Origin: Ministeria vibrans ATCC 50519 | Taxonomy: Eukaryota; Protista; Filasterea | Length of the DNA stretch: 43,125 bases | Direction of reading: 5' to 3' | NCBI GenBank assembly: GCA_943704425.1 | Contig: CALSCP010000491.1 | Location: 1 to 43,125 of the forward strand | In this document: positions 1 to 42,531 of the stretch, one piece after another | Numbering within the stretch: the stretch's first letter is position 1 | Layout: each line of letters opens with the position of its first letter | Program-made: the position numbers and the translations under genes | Notes under the pieces: model-generated | Told to the model about the DNA's origin: nothing | What the model saw: the letters and a program-made list of their open reading frames with translations, nothing else | Database searches by the model: none

Positions 1-1935
1 GAGTATCAGGCGCTGGTGTCGCTGCCCGAGGTCGAAGTGAAGACGATGGAGGAGGACGAGGATGCGGTGGTGACACTGCGCGCCAAGTCGTATCGATACG
101 ACCGCACTGCCAAGTCGTGGAAGGAGCGGGGCACGGGCGAGGTGAAGCTGCTGAAGCACCGAAACAGTGGCAAGGTGCGTGTGCTGATGCGACGGGACCA
201 GACGCTGAAGATCTGCTTGAACCATCTTGTGGTGAGCGGAATGTCGCTGACACTGTTTCCTGGGTACGGAAGCAAGGCGTGGATGTGGCACACGGCAGCG
301 GACATCAGCGACGGTCCGCCCGAAGCGGAGATGTTTGCAGTGCGATTTGCGAATGAGGAGCTCGCGAGTGAGTTCAAGAGTGCGTTTGATGTGGCCGTGG
401 ATGCGTGCGACAAGACGGATGCAACACCGAAGAAGACGGAGGAGAAGGCCGTCGTGGTGAAGGAGGAGGAGAAGAGTGAAGTGACGAGTGCGTCGATTGC
501 GGAGCGGTTCAAGGGGAAGGAAGGGAGCTGGGAGTGCAAGACGTGCATGGTGCGGAATGAGAAGGAGGCTGTCAAGTGCTGTGCGTGTGAGACGAGTCGC
601 GGTGGCGTGGGCAGTGTGAGTGGGAGCGCAGCGAAGCCGGTGTTCAAGCCGACGTTCCAGTTTGGGAGTACGCCCAAGGCAGGTGGGGAGGGCGCGACGA
701 CGTCGACTGAGGTGAAGGCTGAGGTGAAGCCGACGGTTGGGTTTGGCGCTGGTCCCGCGACTGCGTCGAGTGATGCGACTGTGAAGCCGGCGTTTACGTT
801 TGGCGGCACATCAACAGCGAAGAAGGAGGAGGTGAATAGTGACGAAACGGTTGAGGTGAAGCCGATGTTTGCGTCTGGCGCTGGTCTCAAGACTACTTCA
901 AATGATGTTTCTTCAAAAATCGGATCCCTCACGGATGATCATGCTCCTTCCACTCCGATTGCTGCCACGACGCCTTTGGTGAAGCCCACGTTTTCGTTTG
1001 GCACTCGGCCTTCGGCACTCGCCGGAACGACACCACCGTCTGCCATCAGCAGCTCGAGTGAAGATTCCGGCGCTTCCGCGACCCGCGATCCCGAAGATTC
1101 TCCCCTTGCCGTAACTCCTGTGTCTGTCTCAATGCCTGCCATTGTTTCTGGATCCATCACGGCCATCAAGAGCGATCCACCCTCCGCGAGTGCCTCTCCT
1201 TCGCGCCCGTCCACTCCGAGTAGCACCAGTGTCGGCGGTGGCAGTGCGCGCACATCTGTGTCGTCTGTGTCGCGCACCTTCTCTGATGACGGGGGGGTGT
1301 CGCCACTCTTCTCTAAACACACCAGTCGCTCTCCAACGACCATTTTTGGCGGAGGCACTGCGGTGGGCGGAGCAGGGTTTGCTGCGCTTGCCGGAGGCTG
1401 GGCCACGACAGACGACAAGGACAAGGATGTTGTCGGAGACACCACAGAGAAGGAGAATGGTGAAGAAAATGACGAGGATGAGGATGATGGGGAGGGTGGA
1501 GAAGACGAGGACACGGGTGGTGAGTATCAGGCGCTGGTGTCGTTACCCAAGGTCGAAGTGAAGACGATGGAGGAGGACGAGGATGCGGTGGTGACACTAC
1601 CCGCCAAGTCGTATCGATACGACCGCACTGCCAAGTCGTGGAAGGAGCGGGGCACGGGCGAGGTGAAGCTGCTGAAGCACCGAAGCAGTGGCAAGGTGCG
1701 TGTGCTGATGCGACGGGACCAGACGCTGAAGATCTGCTTGAACCATCTTGTGGTGAGCGGAATGTCGCTGACATTGTTTCCTGGGTATGGGAACAAGGCA
1801 TGGGTTTGGCATACGTCGTCGGACGTCAGTGACGGTCCACCCACCTCTGAGATGTTTGCTCTGCGGTTTTCAACCGAAGAACTTGCGAGTGAGTTCAAGA
1901 GTGCGTTTGAGGCGGCTGTTGGAGCTGCCCTGTAA
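1..1935 (+). CDS. RanBP2/Nup358-like nucleoporin, 5' partial: RanBD - RanBP2-type zinc finger - FG/FxFG region - acidic linker - RanBD
   Basis: The frame is open from position 1 (EYQALVSLPEVEVKTMEEDE). It has two Ran-binding domains (WKERGTGEVKLLKH...RVLMRRDQTLKICLNH), a W-x-C-x2-C-x3-N-x6-C-x2-C finger (WECKTCMVRNEKEAVKCCAC) and KPTFQFG/KPAFTFG/KPTFSFG repeats. Stop TAA at 1933-1935. Confidence 0.85.
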   Translation, partial: EYQALVSLPEVEVKTMEEDEDAVVTLRAKSYRYDRTAKSWKERGTGEVKLLKHRNSGKVRVLMRRDQTLKICLNHLVVSGMSLTLFPGYGSKAWMWHTAADISDGPPEAEMFAVRFANEELASEFKSAFDVAVDACDKTDATPKKTEEKAVVVKEEEKSEVTSASIAERFKGKEGSWECKTCMVRNEKEAVKCCACETSRGGVGSVSGSAAKPVFKPTFQFGSTPKAGGEGATTSTEVKAEVKPTVGFGAGPATASSDATVKPAFTFGGTSTAKKEEVNSDETVEVKPMFASGAGLKTTSNDVSSKIGSLTDDHAPSTPIAATTPLVKPTFSFGTRPSALAGTTPPSAISSSSEDSGASATRDPEDSPLAVTPVSVSMPAIVSGSITAIKSDPPSASASPSRPSTPSSTSVGGGSARTSVSSVSRTFSDDGGVSPLFSKHTSRSPTTIFGGGTAVGGAGFAALAGGWATTDDKDKDVVGDTTEKENGEENDEDEDDGEGGEDEDTGGEYQALVSLPKVEVKTMEEDEDAVVTLPAKSYRYDRTAKSWKERGTGEVKLLKHRSSGKVRVLMRRDQTLKICLNHLVVSGMSLTLFPGYGNKAWVWHTSSDVSDGPPTSEMFALRFSTEELASEFKSAFEAAVGAAL

Positions 1936-9502: not shown

Positions 9503-11185
9503 ATGATCTCGGAAGAAGAGTCGACCCTTTGCGTCTCGCTGCGTCAGGCGGTCGAGGAAAAATTTGCCAAAGACTCAGAGGAGATTTCTCCCTATCAAAC
9601 AAAGCTCCTCGACGATGGCCACTTCCTTGTGAGGTAAAGATGGGAGGAGGGGTGTGAGGGGGAAGGGGTGAGAGGGCGAGAAAGGCGTGAAGGAGCGCGG
9701 ATCAACCTGTGAAACGTGACGCTGCTCGATCTTTTCTTTTGAACTTGTGACCGAAAAAAGCATCCAATGGCACGCCACTCTCTTGCGAGGCGTGATCTGT
9801 TGCAGTGGGTGTGTAGATCGGACACAATCGAGCACGCGAAGAGTGGATTTTGTCGTGTGGGTGACAGATGATGATGTTAACTTCCCCGATCGCTCTCGTA
9901 GATATCTGCGCGCCAGAGACGGCCACGTTGCCAAGGCAGCGACCATGATGTATTCTTCTTTGAAATGGCGCGATGCAAATCCGCCGGAAGACATTGAGTC
10001 GCAAACTATGGCTGATGATTTGAAAATGGTATGACGACAGACGATACTATTGTGGCGTTTGTGACTGTGTTTTATCTATTGTGTGTGACTGGGGCGTTTT
10101 GTGACTGTTTCTTACCTATTGTGTGTGACTGGGGCGTTTTGTGACTGTTTCTTACCTATTGTGTCTGACTGGGGAGTTTGTGACTGTTTCTTATCTATTG
10201 CGTCTGACTGTCGTGTGTGTGCCTGTTTCTTACCTATTGTGTCTGACTGGCGCGTTTGTGACTGGTTCTTACCTATTGTGTCTGACTGGCGCGTTTGTGA
10301 CTGTTTCTTGCCTATTGTGGTCTGTGGATCGTTAAATGGCTTGTGTACTTTTGATTGTGTAGGGTAAAATGTACATGAACGGACGGGACAAGGAAGGACG
10401 ACCGAGTACGTAACAATACTTACGGATCATCCAAGTACCCAAATTTGACTATTATTACTTGTAGTTGTGATATTCCGTCCGTCGCGCGACGATGATTCGC
10501 TGGGAACACTCGAGTCCAAAGTGCGCTTCTTTGTGTGGGTTATTGAATTTTCGATTGCACGAATGGCTCAAGGTTATACACAATTCAATCCGCTTATCCC
10601 ATTCACGCCGTGCTATGCTCCTCTCTTCATGCTGTGACACGTATCTCTCGACATCTCTCCACAGGCGTCACTCAAATGACGTGGATCATCGACATGAGCT
10701 CATACCACATTGGTCCGTCCGACCTCAAACGCGCATCTCTCGCCAAAGCACTCCTCAACACACTCCAGAACGAATATCCCGAGCGCGTCCATCGGCTTCT
10801 TGTCGTTGAGCCCCCATGGTACTTCCGCGTTGCCTTTGCTCTCATCAGACCCATTCTCAGCGCAAAGACGCTCGAGAAAGTGCTGATGGAGTACCGTTCC
10901 AAAGACTCAACGTAAACAACAAAAACAAAGTTGGTTCGACTGTTTCATACTTTTCTTTCTGGTGGAATTTTAGGGACGAAAAAGTTGTGTTTCCACAGTT
11001 AAGAGAGTTAATTGAAGAAGACCAGCTTGAAGTCGCGTTCGGGTCAGTGAAAAACGAGTGGAAAAAAATGTATCTTCTGACTTTGAATTGTCTTTGTATG
11101 TTTCCTTTTCTAAAGTGGAACTTTGGCTGAACCGAATTTTGAGGATTTCTTGCGGGGAAAAACTCCACATGATGTTGTAGAGTAA
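9503..11185 (+). CDS. CRAL-TRIO/Sec14-like lipid-binding protein, about 7 exons
   Basis: DDGHFLVR|YLRARDGHVAKAATMMYSSLKWR, GKMYMNGRDKEGRP, QMTWIIDM, LQNEYPERVHRLLVVEPPWYFRVAFALIRPILSAKTLEKV, IEEDQLEVAFG|GTL. Stop at 11183-11185. Confidence 0.9.
10047..10322. repeat. Intronic minisatellite, about 7 copies of a 39-40 bp unit
   Basis: The unit gtgactgtttcttacctattgtgtctgactgg(g)gcgttt repeats with starts near 10061, 10101, 10141, 10180, 10219, 10258 and 10297. Confidence 0.95.
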
Positions 11186-11772: not shown

Positions 11773-11856
11773 ATCGCCATGCGGGGGGTTTGGTTAGCAT
11801 TAATAGAAAACAGGGCTTAGACCGATGAAGATGCGGTTCGACTTTGCGTCGTGCCT
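11773..11856 (+). pseudogene. Degenerate tRNA copy, first unit of the tRNA-Gln array
   Basis: cagggcttagaccgatgaagatgcggttcgactttgcgtcgtgcctctt aligns without gaps to the 3' part of the Gln genes and is followed by the same spacer start (ctctt.atataattatgttga). The stems are disrupted. Confidence 0.7.
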
Positions 11857-11942
11857 CTTGATATAATTATGTTGATATTTTTTTGTTTTGGTTTTGAGTT
11901 TGGTGGTTTTCTTTGCTTTGGTTATTTGGGTGTTCTTTATTT

Positions 11943-12014
11943 GGGACCATGGTGTATGGGTTATCATACATGGTTCTGACCCATGTGAACGCGGTTCGAG
12001 TCCGCGTGGTCCCT
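11943..12014 (+). tRNA. tRNA-Gln(CTG)
   Basis: Acceptor stem GGGACCA/TGGTCCC, anticodon arm CATGG-TT-CTG-AC-CCATG, T arm CGCGG-TTCGAGT-CCGCG, discriminator T. Confidence 0.95.
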
Positions 12015-12105
12015 CTTCATATAATTATGTTGAGTCTATTGTTTTTGATGTTTTTTTATTTTGTGTTCTTTGTTTCGCTGTTTTGTTTGTGATATCTTTG
12101 TGATT

Positions 12106-12177
12106 GGGACCATGGTGTATGGGTTATCATACATGGTTCTGACCCATGTGAACGCGGTTCGAGTCCGCGTGGTCCCT
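12106..12177 (+). tRNA. tRNA-Gln(CTG)
   Basis: Identical to the copy at 11943. Confidence 0.95.
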
Positions 12178-12266
12178 CTTCATATAATTATGTTGAGTCT
12201 ATTTTTTGATGTTTGTTTATTTTGTGTTCTTTGTTTCGCTGTTTTGTTTGTGATATCTTTGTGATT

Positions 12267-12338
12267 GGGACCATGGTGTATGGGTTATCATACATGGTTT
12301 TGACCCATGTGAACGCGGTTCGAGTCCGCGTGGTCCCT
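12267..12338 (+). tRNA. tRNA-Gln(TTG)
   Basis: Same body, anticodon arm CATGG-TT-TTG-AC-CCATG. Confidence 0.95.
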
Positions 12339-12429
12339 CTTTATATAATTATGTTGATTCTATTGTTTTTGATGTTTGTTTATTTTGTGTTCTTTGTTTC
12401 GCTGTTTTGTTTGTGATATCTTTGTGATT

Positions 12430-12501
12430 GGGACCATGGTGTATGGGTTATCATACATGGTTTTGACCCATGTGAACGCGGTTCGAGTCCGCGTGGTCCC
12501 T
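12430..12501 (+). tRNA. tRNA-Gln(TTG)
   Basis: Same body with TTG anticodon, followed directly by a T-run (Pol III terminator). Confidence 0.95.
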
Positions 12502-14957: not shown

Positions 14958-16529
14958 TCAGTCTTCCTTCTCCGAGTTGCTAGTGGGCGTCTCCGTCTCT
15001 TGCGCAGTCGTCTCAGTCATCTCATTCGCTTCTGGTGTAGTCTTATCGGTCTCCACAGTCTCTTCCACCGTCTCCGTCTCTTCCACCGTCTCCGTCGGTT
15101 TCTCCGTCTCCGTCTCTTCCGCTGTCTCAGTCTCTTCCGCTGCCTCAGTCTCTTCCGCTGTCTCAGTCTCTTCCGCTGTCTCAGTCTCTTCCACCGTCTC
15201 AGTCTCCTCCGCCGTCTCAGTTTCTTCCGCCGTCTCGGTCTCTTCCACCGTCTCAGTCTCTTCCGCTGTCTCAGTCTCTTCCGCGGTCTCAGTCTCTTCC
15301 GCGGTCTCAGTCTCTTCCGCGGTCTCAGTCTCTTCCGCGGTCTCAGTCTCCTCCGCGGTCTCAGTCTCTTCCGCCGTCTCGGTCTCTTCCACCGTCTCAG
15401 TCTCCTCCGCCGTCTCAGTTTCTTCTGTCGTCTGAGTTTGTTCGGTCTGCTCTGTCGTCTCAGTCGCTTTGGTTTCGCCAGTCTCAGTCTGTTGCGGTTC
15501 TTCCGTCTCAGGCTGCTCTGGTTCCGTCTCGACCGTCTCCTCAGTTTCTTCACCCTCGTCAGTTTCTGCTGTCGTCCCAATTGTCTCGGCCTCTTCGGTC
15601 TCCGCTTGAGTCTCTTCTAGCCCCGTCTCTTCTGCCTTCTCACTTTGTTCCGTCTCCTCTGTCCGTTCCGTCGCCACATTTGTCTCTTCTGATTTGGTCT
15701 CTTCAGCCTTTTTTGTTTCGCCTGCCGTTTCAGTCTCATGCGTCCCCTCAATCGACTCAGCCTCCTGCGTTGGAGTCTGTTCTGATGCCGTCTCTTCTGT
15801 CTCCTCTGCCTTCTCGGTCTCTTCTGCCTCTTCCACCACCTCTACCCCTTGCTCTTCCTCGACCACTGCCACCTCAGCATCATCCTCCCCCTCACCCACA
15901 GCGCCACCACCCTCTTCGCTCTCCTCCTCCACCGTCTCCACCAGTCGCCTCTGTCCGCCACCTTCGGGTCGCCAGGCGCCCGTCGACAGCTGCCGTCGCG
16001 CTCGCTTGCTCTTCTCAATCACTCGGTTCCGCTGCATCAGTCGTGCTTGAGCGGCGCGTCGCTTTGAATGCGCATCACTCTAAAGACGCAGAAACAACGA
16101 AAACAACGAAGACAGCAGTATTAGTGATAATAAGCTCAACGTCTCAAACCGCATCTCTCGCGTGATCCCTTACCGCCTGCTGCATCAAATCATCTTCTGC
16201 CTCGACAAGGACACGCTGCTGCAGCTGCACGGTTCACGATGGACAAGCGTAAACGGCACAAAGAAGAGTTGTGTTGCAAAAATGTAATACCTCATCAATT
16301 TCACCGTCGCGCGCCTTTATTCTGTCGCTGTCGACCGACACAGTCAGCTCAACTGTGCACCCCGCAACGATGTTCGGCGGCAAATGGGTCCTATTCAGCG
16401 CACGTCAGCTAATCGACACGAAAACGATCTGTCGTACATTGGATACTCCAAAAGAAGATTCTCTTCAGAGAGCAGCGTCGCCGCCGCACTCGTGACGGAA
16501 CTCACTGTGAACACTGCACTGTACGACAT
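14958..16529 (-). CDS. Chs5 N-terminal-domain-like protein with long acidic E/T-rich tail (about 454 aa, 4 exons)
   Basis: Exons 16529-16438, 16390-16291, 16224-16174 and 16079-14958 splice in frame. They give MSYSAVFTVSSVTSAAATLLSEENLLLEYPMTHLPPNIVAGCTVELTVSVDSDRIKARDGEIDELQQRVL, similar to yeast Chs5 N-term ([45 protein letters not shown]...IQAKIL). Confidence 0.7.
15055..15430 (-). repeat. Coding 18-bp tandem repeat (T[A/V]EETE)n
   Basis: About 20 copies of gtctcagtctcttccgc[g/t/c] on the + strand. Confidence 0.95.
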
Positions 16530-17613: not shown

Positions 17614-18541
17614 TCACATTTCCATTGGAGTGCTGAGTGTGTTGCGCTGCTTTGCTAGTTCAAGAATGCGACCGCTTTCCAGCCACTCGAGGGTCGATCG
17701 TTCGTCTTCCCCTGCTGCGTTTGTGCTTGGTGTGATGATGCTCAGGCTCAGTGTGCTCTGGTCAAAGTCGGACAGTTGGCTCTGTGATTGCAGTCGTATT
17801 CTTGTTGAGCGTCGCACTGAGTTGGAGATAGAGAGGGGGGGAATGAGAGAGTGAGAGAGAGAGAAAGTGATAGAAAGAGAGAGAGATACAAAGTAAAAAA
17901 GAGAGAGAGAAACAAAGTGATAGAGAGAGAAAAACAAAGTGATAGAGAGAGAGAAACAAAGTAATAAAGAAAGGCAAATAAGTTGTGCGGTCCGTTGAGT
18001 AAAAGGCTCATAATAAAAATCTTATTGAATGAGTGACGACGAAAAATCAATCACTTGTTGCGTAAAAACACACCAAACAAACACGTTTTTCTACTAATAA
18101 TCTTATTAGGTATCATTCGCAATTGAGTTCCCCAACAAAAACAACCACCGTCACAGTTCACACACAACCCACTCGTGTAGTCAACTGAGAGACAAAACAT
18201 AAATCGTCCAAAAAATAAAACCACAATAAACAATGTTTTTGCGGTCACAAAATCCACACAGTGACACATTTCTTACACAGGGAATCTTCTGACATGGACA
18301 TGGTGCTCGCGACGCTGCTTGTCGACTCCGACCGCGTGCGGCCAAGCGAATCTACGCGGATCAGCGTCAGCAGTGGGGCGAGAAAAACTCCGTTGAGACA
18401 CCTCACCAGTGCGTTTGCGCCGCTTGGCGTTGTTCACCGTCGGCTCGCCGTTCTGGCTGTTGCAATCGAATGCATCGTCGTCAGGGCCTTCCAGGAGCCG
18501 TTTGGAGTTCGACCGCGTTCGACCGTGCAATCCACGACGGT
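17614..18541 (-). CDS. Hypothetical protein, 3' exons only (5' part probably in the N gap)
   Basis: There is a polypyrimidine/AG acceptor at 18542. GC-rich exons give ...NNAKRRKRTG..., ...RTRSESTSSVASTMSMSEDSL|LRRSTRIRLQ...PMEM*. No family recognised. Confidence 0.45.
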
Positions 18542-18569
18542 CTAAAAAAAAAAAAAAAAAAAACGGGGG

Positions 18570-18949
18570 NNNNNNNNNNNNNNNNNNNNNNNNNNNNNNN
18601 NNNNNNNNNNNNNNNNNNNNNNNNNNNNNNNNNNNNNNNNNNNNNNNNNNNNNNNNNNNNNNNNNNNNNNNNNNNNNNNNNNNNNNNNNNNNNNNNNNNN
18701 NNNNNNNNNNNNNNNNNNNNNNNNNNNNNNNNNNNNNNNNNNNNNNNNNNNNNNNNNNNNNNNNNNNNNNNNNNNNNNNNNNNNNNNNNNNNNNNNNNNN
18801 NNNNNNNNNNNNNNNNNNNNNNNNNNNNNNNNNNNNNNNNNNNNNNNNNNNNNNNNNNNNNNNNNNNNNNNNNNNNNNNNNNNNNNNNNNNNNNNNNNNN
18901 NNNNNNNNNNNNNNNNNNNNNNNNNNNNNNNNNNNNNNNNNNNNNNNNN
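18570..18949. other. Assembly gap (N run)
   Basis: Run of N. Confidence 1.
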
Positions 18950-18996
18950 ATAATTCTTATTTTAGTTATTAATTGTTTTTTGTCTGTTTGTTTACG

Positions 18997-20339
18997 ATGC
19001 TGTACCTGGCGCTGGTGATGTCACTCATGATGACAGTGTGCACCTGCCAGACGGCGGATGTGTTCAATGAGCAAGGGAACATCATTTTGGCGCCTGCTGT
19101 GGGCGGCAGCGTCTTGGTGCGCTCGGACGGCGGCCCTGACGTCGCCATTGCCTCCTCGACAGCGCCAACGTCCTCCTCTACCGCCTCCATGTGCATGGGC
19201 TCCACTTTGCTGCGGCAGGTCCATCAATTCAACGCGACGCTGGCGACCGTTGACGGGTGCACACTCGCAACGGCACTGCCCTTCTCGTGACCGGACCCAC
19301 TCCTTCGGCGTCCGCGTCCGAGCCCATGCTGGTACGAGTTTATCAGGCGTCCATCCACAAGGCGGGCACCAAGCCGGTGTTTCGACTCGTCCAGGAAATT
19401 CCCTCGCAAGATGTGCGTTCTGTCCGATGCTACACTGACGACGCTGTGACGTACCTGGTTGTGGCCAACTTTGTCAATCCCGCTGGCTCCAATTACTCCC
19501 AGTGGTCGGTTGTCTACCGCCTGAGCGACCTGTTTCTTCCTATCCAGTTCATTCCGACCGTTGGCGCATTCCATGCGGAGGTGTTCGCCGTCGACGCCTC
19601 TCGCTTTCTCGCCATCTCCCAGTACTACGACCTGGAAACGGCTCGAGCTGGCACCAGCGGCTTTGGTCTTGCCTCCCGAGTATTCAAGTGGAACATCGTT
19701 CTGTCTGAATTTGAAGAGACTGCCTCTGTAGCGACACTCGGCGCCAGCATGTTCAAACACTTTCGCTTCCACAACAGTGAATTTCTCTTCTTGACGGAGC
19801 GAGGTGCTGCCGCACACATCGAGGCAAACTCAACGCTGTACGTCTTCAATGGGTCCACGAGTGCCCTCACTCCCGTCGAGAGAGTGCCCACTCGCACGGC
19901 TCTTGGCTCGGACTTCTTCGAGGCGGACGACACGGGCTACCTTGTTGTGGCAAACTACCGTCTCGAGACGGATCTCAACCAATTTCTGTCCGTGTACACT
20001 CTGAATACGGATCCTGCTCCGCAACTCACGCTGCACCAGACCGTTCCGTGCGTCGGCTGTCTGTATCCCGAAGTGTTTCAGGCTAACGAGCGTACATTTC
20101 TCGCCGTCGCCGGACGCTACACTGGCTCTACCTTTGCCAATGTGTCTCCCTTGTATGTCTTCAACGCACAAACTCGATTGTTTGAGCATCTTGAAAATAT
20201 GCAGACAGACGGCATCTGGTCTTTAAAGCACTTTGCACTTGGTTCCCTTCCCTTCCACTTTTGTGTTGCCGCCGAGGGTCACCTCACTGGTCTCTCCTCC
20301 GTCTACTATGTAAATCATTTTTATGTTCAAGACGATTAA
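18997..20339 (+). CDS. Secreted EAR/EPTP-repeat beta-propeller protein (TSPEAR/LGI-like), with a frame break near 19250-19290
   Basis: Signal peptide MLYLALVMSLMMTVCTC. Repeats include FRLVQEIPSQDV...YLVVANF, SVVYRL..LFLPIQFIPTVGAFHAEVF...FLAISQ, SRVFKWN...FEETASVATLGA and SPLYVFNAQTRLFEHLENM. The N-terminal ORF and the repeat ORF are in different frames. Confidence 0.75.
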
Positions 20340-30068: not shown

Positions 30069-31429
30069 TTACTCGGTTTTCTCTTGTGCTTCTCGCTCCT
30101 GTTGTTCTTCGCGTTCAGAAGCAATTCGTTGCCAACGGCGATTCTCACGGTCGCGTTCAGTTGCGTTTTGGCGGTAAATGGGCTTTTTGTTGCTACAAAG
30201 GAGGTGGGAATAAAAATGAGATAAAGGTGTTTTGGCTAGCATGAGAGTGATTAAGTGTGTTGTAGCATGGGAGTGATTAAGTGTGTTGTGTTGTAGCATG
30301 GGAGTGATATAGTGTGTGTGTTGTAGCATGAGAGTGATTTAGTGTGTTGTAGCATGAGAGTGATATAGTGTGTGTGTTGTATTATGAGAGTGATTAAGTG
30401 TGTTGTAGCATGAGAGTGATATAGTGTGTGTGTTGTAGTATGAGAGTGATTAAGTGTGTTGTAGCATGAGAGTGATATAGTGTGTTGTATTATGAGAGTG
30501 ATTAAATGTGTTGTAGCATGAGAGTGATATAGTGTGTGTGTGTTGTAGTATGAGAGTGATTAAGTGTGTTGTAGCATGAGAGTGATATAGTGTGTGTGTT
30601 GTAGTATGAGAGTGATTAAGTGTGTTGTAGCATGAGAGTGATANNNNNNNNAGTGTGTGTGTTGTAGTATGAGAGTGATTAAGTGTGTTGTAGCATGAGA
30701 GTGATATAGTGTGTGTGTTGTAGTATGAGAGTGATTAAGTGTGTTGTAGCATGAGAGTGATTTAGTGTGCTGTAGCATGAGAGTGTTGTCAGTGAGTGCA
30801 TTGTTAAAACAGGTCAGAGAGAAATGGAGAGCGTCTGCAATCAACTGCATTGAGTGTAGCTGTGGCATTCGAAGGCAATTCATTTGAATGTCATATGAAA
30901 CGTAAAACGCTTTTGTGTGATCGCCACGACACTTTCCGCATATGCTGCGTGCTTCCGCCGTGGCGCATAAGCTGCGTCATGGGGAAGGTAAGGGGATGCT
31001 GCTGCGGGCGTGTGTGTGTATGTGTGTGTGTGTGTGTGTGTACGTGACGGCTGCTTCGTGGATGGCTTCCATGACATAGACGTTGTTCTTGTTTGCCTCT
31101 GTGATGGTCCGCTCGTACATCGCACGGCGCTCTTCGGGCACGGTCTGTGTGCGGGAAGGAAGGAGAGGGGCGGGGTTTGTGAGGCAAGAGGGTGACGGTC
31201 GGTCGGTGTGGAGTGACGAGAGAGAGACAGTGAAAGTGACGAAAACTGATCGAGAAAATGAAGACGACGAAGAAAGAGCACTTCTTGCAGTGTTTGCCGC
31301 AGGGGATTGTACCTCAAGGAAGTCGGCGATGTTGTCGGGGCCCGTCAGGTTGACTCGCATCCACCAGCCAAAGCCCATCAGAACGGAACTACCGACAATG
31401 ACTTTGGTCCACATCATGGAGCGCGACAT
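30069..31429 (-). CDS. Cbp4/UQCC3-like complex III assembly factor (113 aa; exons 31429-31313, 31144-31044, 30192-30069)
   Basis: WTKVIVGSSVLMGFGWWMRVNLTGP...LE|TVPEERRAMYER...VMEAIHEAAVT|NKKPIY resembles Cbp4 (WLKVYAIGGAIIGSG...TP...SPELRLQYER...QETSQSDDPIW). It has a single TM helix and consistent intron phases. Confidence 0.7.
30225..30785. repeat. Intronic minisatellite of 25-31 bp units (gtgtgttgtag[c/t]atgagagtgat...), mostly alternating A/B dimers
   Basis: About 20 units are seen directly, with a small N gap at 30644-30651. Confidence 0.95.
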
Positions 31430-33436: not shown

Positions 33437-33564
<128 letters not shown>

Positions 33565-33570
33565 TTTGTG

Positions 33571-34226
33571 ATGGCGGACGACGAGGAGCACTCACCGCTG
33601 CTCCCGGGCTGTGATCGGCAGCTGGAGGCCAAGCGATGGTACATTCTGGCAGTGTATTCGCTGGCGGCCTTCTGTCAAGTACGCATTGCGCTAGAGGACC
33701 CCCACCCTGACCCCTGTGCGCCCTCCCAGGGCACCGTGTGGCTGACCTTCAGCTCTATTCCCATCTGCAAGCAGTACTATGCGGGCGTGACGGACCAGAC
33801 GCTTGATCTGCTGCTCAACTGGTACTGATTGTGTGTGTGTGTGTGTGTGTTTGTTTCTGTGTGTTTTGTGATCTTTATTACTGTGTCGCGCGTGTGTTGT
33901 GCCGCACTGGCCGGTCGCTTTATGTGTGTGTTGTGGTGTGTTTATGCCATACAGAGTGGTTTGTTTGTCTGGCGTTGCTGTGTTTCGTTAGAATTAACAT
34001 ATTGATTATTCTGTTATCTTTCTCGTTATGTCATGTTGTCTCTTTTATGAGTATACTGTTGTTCTCTTTATGAACTCTCTTACTGGTCTGTTTTGTTCTA
34101 TTTCATGAGCTATCTCATTGGTTGTTTATGTTCTGTATCACCTTGTTTCTCTCTCTCTCTCTTTCTCTATCACTTTCTTTTCTATCACTCTCTCTCTCTC
34201 TCTCTTTCTCTATCACTTTGTTTCTT

Positions 34227-34288
<62 letters not shown>

Positions 34289-34430
34289 TTTCTTTTTCTG
34301 TTCGATCATTCTCTTTAATGTATATTATATATAGGGGACCCATTGCATTCATTCCANNNNNNNNNNNNNNNNNNNNNNNNNNNNNNNNNNNNNNNNNNNN
34401 NNNNNNNNNNNNNNNNNNNNNNNNNNNNNN

Positions 34431-34527
<97 letters not shown>

Positions 34528-39133: not shown

Positions 39134-39603
39134 TGCGAGAAAATTGATGATTGAATGATAGATATGAATATAGTTTGGTTATCAACTTTGAAAAAGAAGT
39201 CTCATCATATGACCCCGACCCGAGCACTCAGCACAGTCTACTAACTCTCAAGTAGTCTGTAGACTGTAGTCCAACTATAGTTATGGTCAGTCTTCGTCAG
39301 CACACCTAGCCTTTAAAACACTTCTCCAAAACGTCGATCCACCAGTCATAGTCATGACTAAATGAGCCCACAGGTGATCCGACACATCGTTAAAAGGTCC
39401 TCTCTCGGAATCAGACTTAATCAAGTATTAAGAGATTAGAGAGTTCTTAAGTTCTCGAAAGTAGCTCGAGTAGAAGTAAATTAAATGAAAAAAAAAATTA
39501 GTATCAATATTAATTATTATAATAATAATAATCATTACTTTCATTAGACAATTACGAAAAAAAAAAAAGAAAAAAAAAGAGAGAGGGAAATGAAACACGA
39601 ACC

Positions 39604-39620
39604 AAAAAAAAACAAAAAAA
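39604..39620 (-). terminator. Pol III T-run terminator of the permuted tRNA-Arg
   Basis: The minus strand reads TTTTTTTGTTTTTTTTT, starting 11 nt after the 5' half. Confidence 0.75.
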
Positions 39621-39631
39621 GAAGCAGGTAA

Positions 39632-39710
39632 CCGTAGGCAGGCGCCTTATCCAATTGGGCCATCCGACCGTAGAAGGTCGAACAGGGACTCGAACCCTGA
39701 ATCTCCTGCT
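39632..39710 (-). tRNA. Circularly permuted tRNA-Arg(ACG): 3' half 39710-39675, spacer TCTAC 39674-39670, 5' half 39669-39632
   Basis: Minus strand: AGCAGGAGATTCAGGGTTCGAGTCCCTGTTCGACCT-tctac-GGTCGGATGGCCCAATTGGATAAGGCGCCTGCCTACGG. Reordered, it folds as a full cloverleaf: acceptor GGTCGGA/TTCGACC, anticodon arm CCTGC-CT-ACG-G^A-GCAGG, T arm CAGGG-TTCGAGT-CCCTG. Confidence 0.9.
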
Positions 39711-40231
39711 GTCTGTTCGCCATTTGCTTCTGAAACTTTTTTGTCATAATGCGCATCTTAATATAATTTTCATTTTATTTAATAACAATATCCACTCTGA
39801 CGCTCCTACCTTCCCTATGTCTATTCTTGCAACTCTATTAAGCACAAAATGTTGTACAGTGTTGGAAAACGAGCGTTTTGTGAGAAATCAAAATTGCCAA
39901 ATTTTAAGAAAAACGACCTTGATGCGGCATCGACTGTCCATTCCATGGAAGGTGTTTTTGCATACTATATCATTACTGCATGGAGCATGAGCGACGAGAG
40001 CGCGCGCATTTTTGATTGATACGGCGAAAGATCAGTGTTGTTTCAGTTTGCTTCTCACATATCACATGTCATTCGATGCAAGGAGGAATGACTTTATTGA
40101 CTCGACTCACTTGACAGTTTAGAAAACACGAGAGAATAGCGTTGACCTGGAGCATTATTCCGAAATCGATTAATGTCAGTTTCAAATCAATCAATGCATA
40201 ATAATTATTTTTATTTTCAGTTCATGGGTAT

Positions 40232-40434: not shown

Positions 40435-40483
<49 letters not shown>

Positions 40484-42459: not shown

Positions 42460-42531
<72 letters not shown>

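What the first reader, a model, noticed from the sequence alone, without database searches (positions are those of the whole stretch)
39632..39710. Circularly permuted tRNA-Arg(ACG) gene in an apparent opisthokont/holozoan genome
Seen in sequence (minus strand): tRNA positions 38-73 (39710-39675) come first, then a 5-nt spacer TCTAC, then positions 1-37 (39669-39632), an 11-nt trailer and a T7 run. Swapping the halves gives an intact tRNA: a 7-bp acceptor stem with one G-U, perfect 5-bp anticodon and T stems, and the CT-ACG-GA loop and AGATT variable loop typical of eukaryotic Arg(ACG). The break falls exactly at 37/38, the canonical tRNA intron site. Neither half has a partner in normal order nearby. 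Established knowledge: permuted tRNA genes mature through a circular intermediate, where the splicing endonuclease and ligase join the ends and RNase P and tRNase Z remove the spacer. I know them from Cyanidioschyzon merolae, Ostreococcus/Micromonas, the Bigelowiella nucleomorph and Thermofilum pendens, but not from opisthokonts. Inference: this is a functional permuted gene that arose independently in a close relative of animals and that standard tRNA scans would miss.
Basis: partly seen in the sequence, partly recalled or inferred. Interest (0 to 1): 0.95.

Follow-up and report, generated by a model that had tools for sequence, protein, structure and literature searches.

The report
Circularly permuted tRNA-Arg(ACG) gene candidate
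The two halves of an arginine tRNA gene sit in swapped order, split exactly at the normal tRNA intron site, in a flagellated protist whose proteins look most like those of animals and their unicellular relatives. If it is expressed, it would be the first such gene outside algae and one archaeon, but expression is unproven.

Summary
On the minus strand, 39710-39675 is tRNA positions 38-73, 39674-39670 is a TCTAC spacer and 39669-39632 is positions 1-37. An 11-nt trailer and a T7 run follow.

Swapping the halves gives a flawless tRNA-Arg(ACG). All invariant bases and the ArgRS identity bases A20, C35 and G36 are present. Positions 8-48 are identical to a conventional Arg(ACG) gene found in a metagenome. 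Standard scanners miss the locus, and no other copy of either half lies in the 43 kb.

The anatomy matches known type II (37/38) permuted tRNA genes. Their reported intervening sequences range from 1 to 74 bp, and two are 5 bp.

The flanking processing signals are weak. A C32:G(-3) pair and a 3-nt bulge are possible, but there is no canonical bulge-helix-bulge (BHB) motif. Leader-trailer pairing is not significant (p about 0.1). The TATA-like element and the T-run lie in AT/T-rich DNA.

Best protein hits are to animals and unicellular holozoans at 30-50% identity, so the taxon call is plausible but not proven. No related genome or RNA data could be reached.

Verdict: a genuine permuted arrangement, and probably (about 0.5) a functional gene. 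An undecayed, non-functional rearrangement is the main rival.

The parts
39757..39766 (-). TATA-like element TTATATTAAG, about 47-56 nt upstream of A38. It is a candidate TFIIIB site for initiation that does not need the internal promoter boxes in their normal order.
   Evidence: Read directly. It lies in an AT-rich stretch, so it could be chance. The four conventional tRNA-Gln genes show no comparable element upstream.
39711..39745 (-). Putative 5' leader; the transcription start is not known. It contains GAAGCA (39730-39725), which can pair with the trailer, and G(-3) at 39713, which can pair with C32.
   Evidence: Folds. The pairing is not significant against nulls (p 0.10-0.14).
39675..39710 (-). 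3' half of tRNA-Arg(ACG): positions 38-73. It holds the 3' strand of the anticodon stem, the variable loop AGATT, the T arm with the B box GGTTCGAGTCC, the 3' strand of the acceptor stem and discriminator U73.
   Evidence: Rfam finds a local tRNA T-arm hit.
39670..39674 (-). Intervening sequence TCTAC. Together with U73 it closes the acceptor stem as a 6-nt loop. It contains no T-run.
   Evidence: The length is within the known range of 1-74 nt, and two known genes have 5 nt (PMC3978253, Table 1).
39632..39669 (-). 5' half of tRNA-Arg(ACG): positions 1-37. It holds the 5' strand of the acceptor stem, the D arm with the A box, the 5' strand of the anticodon stem, and C32 U33 A34 C35 G36 G37.
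   Evidence: Positions 8-37 are identical to conventional genes in L001 and L002.
39621..39631 (-). 3' trailer TTACCTGCTTC. It would be removed at the 37/38 cut. TGCTTC (39626-39621) is complementary to the leader sequence GAAGCA.
39604..39620 (-). T7, then G, then T9: a likely RNA polymerase III terminator.
   Evidence: Read. The whole downstream region is T-rich, so the run is weak evidence on its own.

Best explanation
This is a type II (junction 37/38) circularly permuted tRNA-Arg(ACG) gene.

Inferred pathway:
- RNA polymerase III starts about 25-40 nt upstream of A38, helped by the AT-rich TATA-like element and possibly by TFIIIC bound to the B box alone.
- It reads through leader, 3' half, TCTAC, 5' half and trailer, and stops in the T7/T9 run.
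- The transcript folds into a tRNA body. The acceptor stem is closed by a 6-nt loop, and the anticodon stem forms between the two ends of the transcript.
- The tRNA splicing endonuclease measures from the mature body and uses the C32:G(-3) pair with the A-C-A38 bulge. It cuts after G37 and before A38.
- The tRNA ligase joins G37 to A38, giving a 79-nt circle.
- RNase P and RNase Z open the acceptor stem and discard TCTAC.
- CCA addition, A34-to-I34 editing and arginylation follow.

What is shown here: the gene order, the intact cloverleaf, the exact 37/38 tiling, and the absence of any internal terminator. Everything downstream of the DNA is inferred by analogy with Cyanidioschyzon merolae and the green algae.
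For: - The halves tile exactly at 37/38 with no overlap and no gap. Once swapped they give a clean tRNA-Arg(ACG).
- All invariant and semi-invariant bases are intact, as are A20, C35 and G36, which I recall as ArgRS identity elements.
- Positions 8-48 are 100% identical to a conventional Arg(ACG) gene in L002. Identity is 61/74 overall to each of two conventional genes, with the differences confined to the acceptor and T stems.
- The flanks show no significant trace of the missing halves. The retained halves, by contrast, carry no disruptive change. A decayed tRNA-Gln copy in the same window shows what neutral decay looks like in this genome.
- The spacer is 5 nt with no T-run, and there is no TTTT anywhere from the leader to G37. 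A T7 run starts 11 nt after G37.
- The cloverleaf-constrained fold of the 110-nt precursor has the same energy as the unconstrained minimum, -35.5 kcal/mol.
- The Rfam model for YrlA is described as resembling a circularly permuted tRNA with a closed acceptor stem (10.1101/312249). It aligns end to end over 39730-39606, and the T arm, closed acceptor stem and D arm align in that order. This is an independent read-out of the permuted topology.
- The anatomy matches published type II genes (PMC3978253).
- CGU, CGC and CGA make up 287 of 373 Arg codons in six long ORFs, so this tRNA species is in heavy demand.
Against: - There is no RNA evidence, no orthologous locus and no second permuted gene. 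All rests on one locus in one 43-kb window.
- There is no canonical BHB or hBH motif. The helix next to the 3' bulge has only two possible pairs, C32-G(-3) and U33-A(-4) (my reading; folds).
- Leader-trailer pairing is not better than chance. The TATA-like element and the T-run lie in AT/T-rich DNA.
- The A and B boxes are in reversed order. TFIIIC-dependent transcription, the norm in opisthokonts, may therefore fail, or may start inside the 3' half.
- Heavy CGN codon use implies several Arg(ACG) genes elsewhere in the genome, so this copy need not be under selection.
- A recent rearrangement would also look undecayed.
Confidence: 0.5

Rival explanations
1. It is a non-functional, still undecayed rearrangement product, that is, a permuted pseudogene. 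It could have arisen in two ways. One is a tight head-to-tail Arg-Arg gene pair that lost its outer halves. The other is reverse transcription and integration of an RNA bounded by splice sites, such as the piece '3' exon - spacer - 5' exon' cut from a dimeric intron-bearing precursor, or a circularised precursor (models B and C in PMC3978253, section 10). The exact 37/38 ends would then reflect how it was made, not present-day function.
For: - Tandem tRNA duplication and a decaying partial copy are seen in the same window.
- The processing signals in the flanks are not significant and there is no canonical BHB.
- The reversed A/B box order argues against normal transcription.
- Heavy CGN use implies other Arg(ACG) genes exist.
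- There is a weak hint of a decayed T arm (GGTTCGTGTTTC..., 39603-39584) downstream of the 5' half, p about 0.08.
Against: - Two independent deletions ending at the same tRNA position, and at 37/38 in particular, are improbable: roughly (1/74)^2 for random ends, by my own estimate.
- No disruptive substitution occurs in 74 nt, whereas the outer halves are unrecognisable.
- The spacer lacks the terminator that separate genes would need.
- The retro-copy route needs intron-bearing, co-transcribed Arg genes 5 nt apart, and no evidence for those exists here. No poly(A) tail or target-site duplication is evident.
Confidence: 0.33
2. It is a tRNA-like non-coding RNA that stays permuted. It might be a Y-RNA-like scaffold in the manner of bacterial YrlA. 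Or it might be a dedicated source of a 5' tRNA half, if TFIIIC uses the A box and starts transcription inside the 3' half. Either way it is never matured into a decoding tRNA.
For: - The best Rfam match in the region is YrlA, aligned end to end (25.6 bits, E 0.0013 for the 231-nt search).
- YrlA RNAs are described as resembling circularly permuted tRNAs with closed acceptor stems (10.1101/312249).
- The transcript ends can pair.
Against: - The YrlA score is far below the gathering score of 69, and non-standard pairs in the alignment fall mostly in the outer stems. The match therefore comes from the tRNA-like core.
- The anticodon loop halves CUACGG and A are kept exactly as in real Arg(ACG) genes, which a scaffold RNA would not need.
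- YrlA is bacterial.
- The terminal pairing is not significant.
Confidence: 0.08
3. It is an assembly or sequencing artefact, for example a mis-collapsed tandem array of normal Arg genes.
For: tRNA genes are repeats, and arrays exist in this window.
Against: - A collapsed array would leave at least one complete unit. Here unique sequence abuts both halves exactly at 37/38.
- A mis-join through a repeated tRNA keeps the normal order.
- The neighbouring Gln array was assembled with four distinct units.
Confidence: 0.04

Closest known systems
Type II (37/38) circularly permuted tRNA genes of Ostreococcus, Micromonas, the Bigelowiella natans nucleomorph and Cyanidioschyzon merolae (Soma 2007; Maruyama 2010; review PMC3978253)
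   Same: - The 3' half lies upstream of the 5' half on one strand.
- The junction is at 37/38.
- The intervening sequence is short and has no terminator. Two B. natans nucleomorph genes also have 5 nt.
- There is AT-rich or TATA-like DNA upstream and a T-stretch downstream.
- CCA is not encoded.
- The mature sequence has ordinary eukaryotic features.
   Different: - The host appears to be a non-photosynthetic, flagellated, opisthokont-like protist rather than an alga.
- The isoacceptor Arg(ACG) is not among the 34 listed genes.
- The leader and trailer do not form a convincing hBH motif; only an A-I-type C32:G(-3) pair and a 3-nt bulge are possible.
- Expression is untested.
Permuted tRNA-iMet and tRNA-Tyr of Thermofilum pendens (PMC3218864)
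   Same: Swapped halves, a very short intervening sequence (1 and 7 nt) and a single transcript.
   Different: The junction is at 59/60, CCA is encoded, both genes also carry an intron at 37/38, and transcription uses an archaeal promoter.
Bacterial Y RNA YrlA (Rfam RF02553)
   Same: The topology is the same: T arm, closed acceptor-like stem and D arm, enclosed by a helix formed from the two ends of the RNA (10.1101/312249).
   Different: The score is sub-threshold (25.6 against 69 bits). The outer stems do not fit the model, and I saw no Ro60-binding motif by eye. Here the enclosing helix is a true anticodon stem with both parts of an intact Arg anticodon loop. The host domain is also different.
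Closely spaced co-transcribed tRNA gene pairs, for example yeast tRNA-Arg/tRNA-Asp (from my own knowledge), and the dense tRNA cluster in L002
   Same: tRNA bodies separated by only a few nucleotides with no terminator between them. L002 has 5-nt spacing. This is a plausible ancestral state.
   Different: In those pairs both genes are complete and in normal order.

Membership tests
Circularly permuted tRNA gene (type II) | [quoted passage not shown] | tested here: met
   39710-39675, then TCTAC, then 39669-39632 on the minus strand.
Circularly permuted tRNA gene (type II) | Swapped halves give a canonical cloverleaf with the conserved tRNA nucleotides | tested here: met
   ARAGORN calls tRNA-Arg(ACG) on the swapped sequence. 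The invariant bases and 20 of 21 standard stem pairs are present.
Circularly permuted tRNA gene (type II) | Junction exactly at 37/38, the site cut by the eukaryotic splicing endonuclease | tested here: met
   The joined sequence reproduces the contiguous CCTACGG-AGCAGGAGA of conventional genes L001 and L002. Similarity ends sharply on both sides (read by eye).
Circularly permuted tRNA gene (type II) | Leader and trailer form a BHB or hBH motif at the junction | tested here: inconclusive
   A 3-nt bulge (A, C, A38) with C32-G(-3) and U33-A(-4) is possible, but the 4-bp central helix is not (my reading; folds). The terminal GAAGCA/UGCUUC helix is not significant.
Circularly permuted tRNA gene (type II) | Upstream promoter-like element, downstream T-stretch, and no promoter or terminator between the halves | tested here: met
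   TTATATTAAG at 39766-39757, T7 at 39620-39614, and no T4 from the leader to G37. Caveat: the surrounding DNA is AT/T-rich, so these elements carry little weight.
Circularly permuted tRNA gene (type II) | Circular RNA intermediate and a mature aminoacylated tRNA | not testable with these tools
   No RNA data were reachable.
Circularly permuted tRNA gene (type II) | The gene is needed, meaning no conventional gene exists for the same anticodon in the genome | not testable with these tools
   Only 43 kb is available, and the source genome is absent from the protein collections. Codon use suggests several Arg(ACG) genes are likely.
Conventional tRNA gene (Rfam RF00005 / ARAGORN) | Contiguous 5'-to-3' cloverleaf scoring above threshold | tested here: not met
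   No hit at gathering score and none from ARAGORN. The only match is a 12.6-bit local T-arm hit.
YrlA / Y RNA-like (Rfam RF02553) | Score at or above the gathering score of 69 bits, with the outer stems fitting the model | tested here: not met
   The score is 25.6 bits, and non-standard pairs in the alignment fall mostly in the outer stems.

The most novel reading that the evidence does not exclude
A close unicellular relative of animals expresses a circularly permuted tRNA-Arg(ACG). It is transcribed without the normal A-then-B box order and matured through a circular intermediate made by the TSEN-type endonuclease and the tRNA ligase. It would have arisen independently of the algal and archaeal cases, possibly from a dimeric Arg-Arg gene. 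This would show that the animal-lineage tRNA splicing machinery can carry out the permutation pathway in vivo.
Probability: 0.4. Interest if true: 0.85.

Novelty: new member of a known kind. Interest (0 to 1): 0.65.

Why it matters
Permuted tRNA genes are reported only from a few unicellular algae, a nucleomorph and one crenarchaeon. Reviews up to 2026 still list only those (PMC3978253, PMC13578239).

A working example in an opisthokont-like protist would extend the phenomenon to the lineage that contains animals and fungi. It would argue for repeated independent origin from ordinary genes.

It would also raise two testable questions. First, how does RNA polymerase III start when the B box precedes the A box? 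Second, can a ruler-type TSEN complex plus ligase circularise a pre-tRNA?

There is a practical point too. Standard tRNA annotation misses such genes, as ARAGORN and Rfam did here, so tRNA sets of protist genomes may be under-called.

Tried and rejected
- **Source genome and relatives.** Two word-seeded protein searches with CEP104 gave nothing. An exact look-up of the CEP104 ORF gave nothing. The full HMMER search found no relative above about 41% identity. The source genome and its close kin are therefore absent from the collections, and no orthologous locus could be fetched.
- **Scans for the permuted junction.** Scans of bacterial/archaeal genomes and of viral contigs, allowing a variable spacer, found nothing.
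- **Relics of the lost halves in the flanks.** Upstream there is none (p 0.34). Downstream there is a borderline match, GGTTCGTGTTTC... (p 0.08). By-eye in-register comparison gave 7/38 and 5/36 matches, which is below random expectation.
- **Leader-trailer helix as a processing signal.** It is not significant against three null models.
- **Canonical BHB.** None is present (my reading; folds).
- **Mobile-element origin.** The only candidate is a 15-nt AT-rich inverted repeat bracketing the locus. There is no target-site duplication or poly(A), so this was not pursued.
- **YrlA membership.** Rejected on score and on the outer stems.
- **Human origin.** I did not take the contig for human.
- **Spliced gene models.** None was built or searched.

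Full report
**1. Observation**

I read the minus strand of 39450-39900.
- 39710-39675 holds 36 nt corresponding to tRNA positions 38-73.
- 39674-39670 is TCTAC.
- 39669-39632 holds 38 nt corresponding to positions 1-37, with positions 17 and 20a present.
- 39631-39621 is the trailer TTACCTGCTTC.
- 39620-39614 is T7, followed by G and then T9.

ARAGORN and Rfam at gathering score report only the four tRNA-Gln genes at 11943-12501 and nothing here. When the two halves are joined in a script in the order 5' half then 3' half, ARAGORN returns a clean tRNA-Arg(ACG). The native order returns nothing.

Numbering the joined sequence shows:
- Twenty of 21 stem pairs are standard. The exception, C13-A22, is shared by the conventional genes described below.
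- One pair in the acceptor stem is G-U (G6-U67).
- U8, A14, A15:U48, G18G19, A21, U33, G37, G53-U54-U55-C56, A58 and C61 are present.
- A20, C35 and G36 are present. I recall these as the main ArgRS identity elements.

Neither half has another copy in the window with up to three mismatches, and none is expected by chance. A permutation-aware scan found this as the only permuted tRNA in the 43 kb. That scan self-concatenated sliding segments and ran an intron-tolerant ARAGORN on them.

**2. The break is exactly at 37/38**

A metagenome scan for positions 8-37 returned two conventional Arg(ACG) genes from other organisms (L001, L002). Both carry the contiguous sequence ...CCTACGG-AGCAGGAGA.... 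This is precisely what the window's two halves give when joined.

Positions 8-48 are identical to L002. Overall identity is 61/74 to each gene, and the differences are confined to the acceptor and T stems. The bases just outside each half bear no in-register resemblance to the missing half. I counted this by eye on the sequence: 7/38 matches upstream and 5/36 downstream.

**3. Independent read-out of the topology**

An Rfam scan of 39560-39790 at E-value threshold gave the bacterial Y RNA family YrlA as its best hit. The alignment ran end to end over 39730-39606, at 25.6 bits and E 0.0013, against a gathering score of 69.

YrlA RNAs are described as resembling circularly permuted tRNAs with closed acceptor stems (10.1101/312249). 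In the alignment the T arm, the closed acceptor stem and the D arm align in that order, while non-standard pairs fall mostly in the outer stems. I read this as confirmation of the permuted geometry, not as membership of the YrlA family.

**4. Flanks**

*Upstream.* A TATA-like TTATATTAAG lies at 39766-39757, inside an AT-rich stretch. The conventional Gln genes have nothing comparable upstream.

*Internal terminators.* No run of four or more T occurs from the leader to G37. T7 begins 11 nt after G37.

*Fold.* A 110-nt precursor starting at 39730 folds with the leader sequence GAAGCA paired to the trailer sequence UGCUUC. Forcing the cloverleaf costs nothing: -35.5 kcal/mol both with and without the constraint.

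*Weaknesses.*
- The overall z-score of the fold is only -1.26.
- The leader-trailer duplex is matched or beaten by 10-14% of null sequences.
- A canonical bulge-helix-bulge is absent. Next to the possible 3-nt bulge (A, C, A38), only C32-G(-3) and U33-A(-4) can pair.
- That C32:G(-3) pair is the anticodon-intron pair that eukaryotic endonucleases use (PMC3978253, section 8), but a single pair arises by chance one time in four.

*Traces of the lost halves.* Tests for relics in the flanks were negative upstream (p 0.34). Downstream they were borderline (GGTTCGTGTTTC... at 39603-39584, p 0.08).

**5. Organism**

The window is gene-dense, with GC-rich coding sequence and AT/T-rich spacers. It encodes:
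- a RanBP2-like protein, CFAP44, CEP104 and a CAP-Gly protein;
- a TauE-family protein and an EPTP-domain protein.

The organism is therefore a flagellated eukaryote.

The best CEP104 relatives are only about 30% identical overall (the highest of the 150 listed, a short fragment, is 41%). The named proteins among the top twenty are:
- animals (Nematostella, Ptychodera, Oscarella, Ciona and others);
- Chromosphaera, an ichthyosporean;
- Salpingoeca, a choanoflagellate;
- Pigoraptor;
- one streptophyte alga, at rank 15.

The best named CFAP44 hits are animals at 36-50%, then chytrids. Brown algae, green algae, parabasalids and dinoflagellates rank lower. That search saw only proteins 0.55-1.75 times the length of the 671-aa piece I used, so it is biased toward fragments.

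The source genome and any close relative are missing from the collections. I did not take the contig for human.

**6. Comparison with what is known**

The 2014 review lists 34 permuted tRNA genes. They come from C. merolae, two Ostreococcus and two Micromonas species, the B. natans nucleomorph and T. pendens (PMC3978253). Key features from that review:
- Type II (37/38) is the commonest class.
- Intervening sequences range from 1 to 74 bp, and two genes have 5 bp.
- Upstream TATA-like or AT-rich DNA and a downstream T-stretch are typical.
- The junctions of the green-algal and nucleomorph genes form an hBH motif.

A 2026 review still places eukaryotic permuted genes only in certain unicellular algae (PMC13578239). 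My literature searches found no paper linking permuted tRNAs to holozoans or other opisthokonts.

The locus meets the structural criteria of the family. It is inconclusive on the hBH criterion and untestable on expression.

**7. How it most likely works**

The best-supported reading (about 0.5) is a functional type II permuted gene:
- Pol III initiates upstream of the 3' half and terminates in the T7/T9 run.
- The transcript folds into a tRNA body with a closed acceptor stem.
- The splicing endonuclease cuts after G37 and before A38.
- The ligase joins these two ends into a 79-nt circle.
- RNase P and RNase Z remove TCTAC.
- CCA addition, I34 editing and charging follow.

One geometric point is worth noting (inference). 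The TATA-like element lies about 70-85 nt upstream of the B box. That is roughly where TFIIIB sits relative to the B box of a normal gene. TFIIIC bound through the B box alone could therefore still place TFIIIB there.

The strongest arguments for function are:
- the exact tiling at the splice position on both sides;
- the complete integrity of 74 nt next to flanks that retain nothing of the lost halves;
- the terminator-free 5-nt spacer.

A decayed fifth tRNA-Gln copy at about 11778-11870 shows that dead tRNA copies in this genome do accumulate substitutions and indels.

**8. Rivals**

- **Non-functional rearrangement (about 0.33).** It would be young enough to be undecayed. It could come from a tight Arg-Arg pair or from a retro-copied RNA bounded by splice sites. 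It is favoured by the weak flank signals, the reversed box order, and the likelihood that other Arg(ACG) genes exist: CGU, CGC and CGA make up 287 of 373 Arg codons in six long ORFs.
- **A tRNA-like RNA that stays permuted, or a source of 5' halves (about 0.08).** It is suggested by the YrlA echo. The exactly preserved anticodon-loop halves count against it.
- **Assembly artefact (about 0.04).** It does not fit unique flanks abutting both halves at the same tRNA position.

**9. Verdict**

The locus is a new member of a known kind. If it is expressed, it is the first outside algae and archaea. The deciding data are a genome-wide tRNA inventory, long-read confirmation, detection of the circular intermediate, and tRNA-seq for this gene's own acceptor and T-stem sequence.

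Noticed in passing
window 11943-12501 (+), and about 11778-11870: There is a tandem array of four tRNA-Gln genes with a 163-bp period: two CTG copies followed by two TTG copies. A fifth, decayed copy lies just upstream. It carries a 15-nt insertion in the D region and many substitutions, yet its 3' flank (TCTTGATATAATTATGTTGA) is almost intact.
   Followed up: partly
window 16-1935 (+): This is a RanBP2-like ORF that probably runs off the window start. It has two RanBP1 domains and a RanBP2-type zinc finger. By eye the two RanBP1 domains look close to 90% identical to each other, which suggests a recent internal duplication or gene conversion.
   Followed up: no
window 39477-39491 and 39767-39781: A 15-nt inverted repeat, 93% complementary, brackets a roughly 305-bp segment that contains the permuted tRNA locus. 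It is AT-rich and may be chance. No target-site duplication was seen.
   Followed up: partly
window 39584-39603 (-): GGTTCGTGTTTCATTTCCCT lies 28 nt downstream of the 5' half and loosely resembles the T arm and acceptor 3' strand of the same tRNA (16 of 22 positions with a 2-nt gap, p about 0.08). It may be a relic of a lost downstream 3' half, which would fit a tandem-duplication origin.
   Followed up: partly
L002 600-1220 (metagenome contig Ga0098074_1014422): This contig holds a dense cluster of eukaryote-type tRNA genes (Ala-AGC, Asn, Arg-ACG, Lys-CTT, Met). One pair (Arg-Lys) is only 5 nt apart. An apparent intron-bearing tRNA-Arg(TCT) at about 858-945 was missed by ARAGORN. The source organism is unknown.
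   Followed up: no
window 10054-10324, 15056-15437 and 30237-30785: Three minisatellites are present: a 39-bp unit x 6.9 copies, an 18-bp unit x 21 copies (inside an ORF on the minus strand), and a 26/56/82-bp unit spanning about 550 bp. Long TC, AC and CA dinucleotide runs lie at 33442-34527, 40436-40481 and 42462-42528.
   Followed up: no
window 18276-19020: This roughly 700-bp stretch is open in all six reading frames and has very low third-position GC (0.01-0.26). It looks like an AT-rich, low-complexity island between genes.
   Followed up: no
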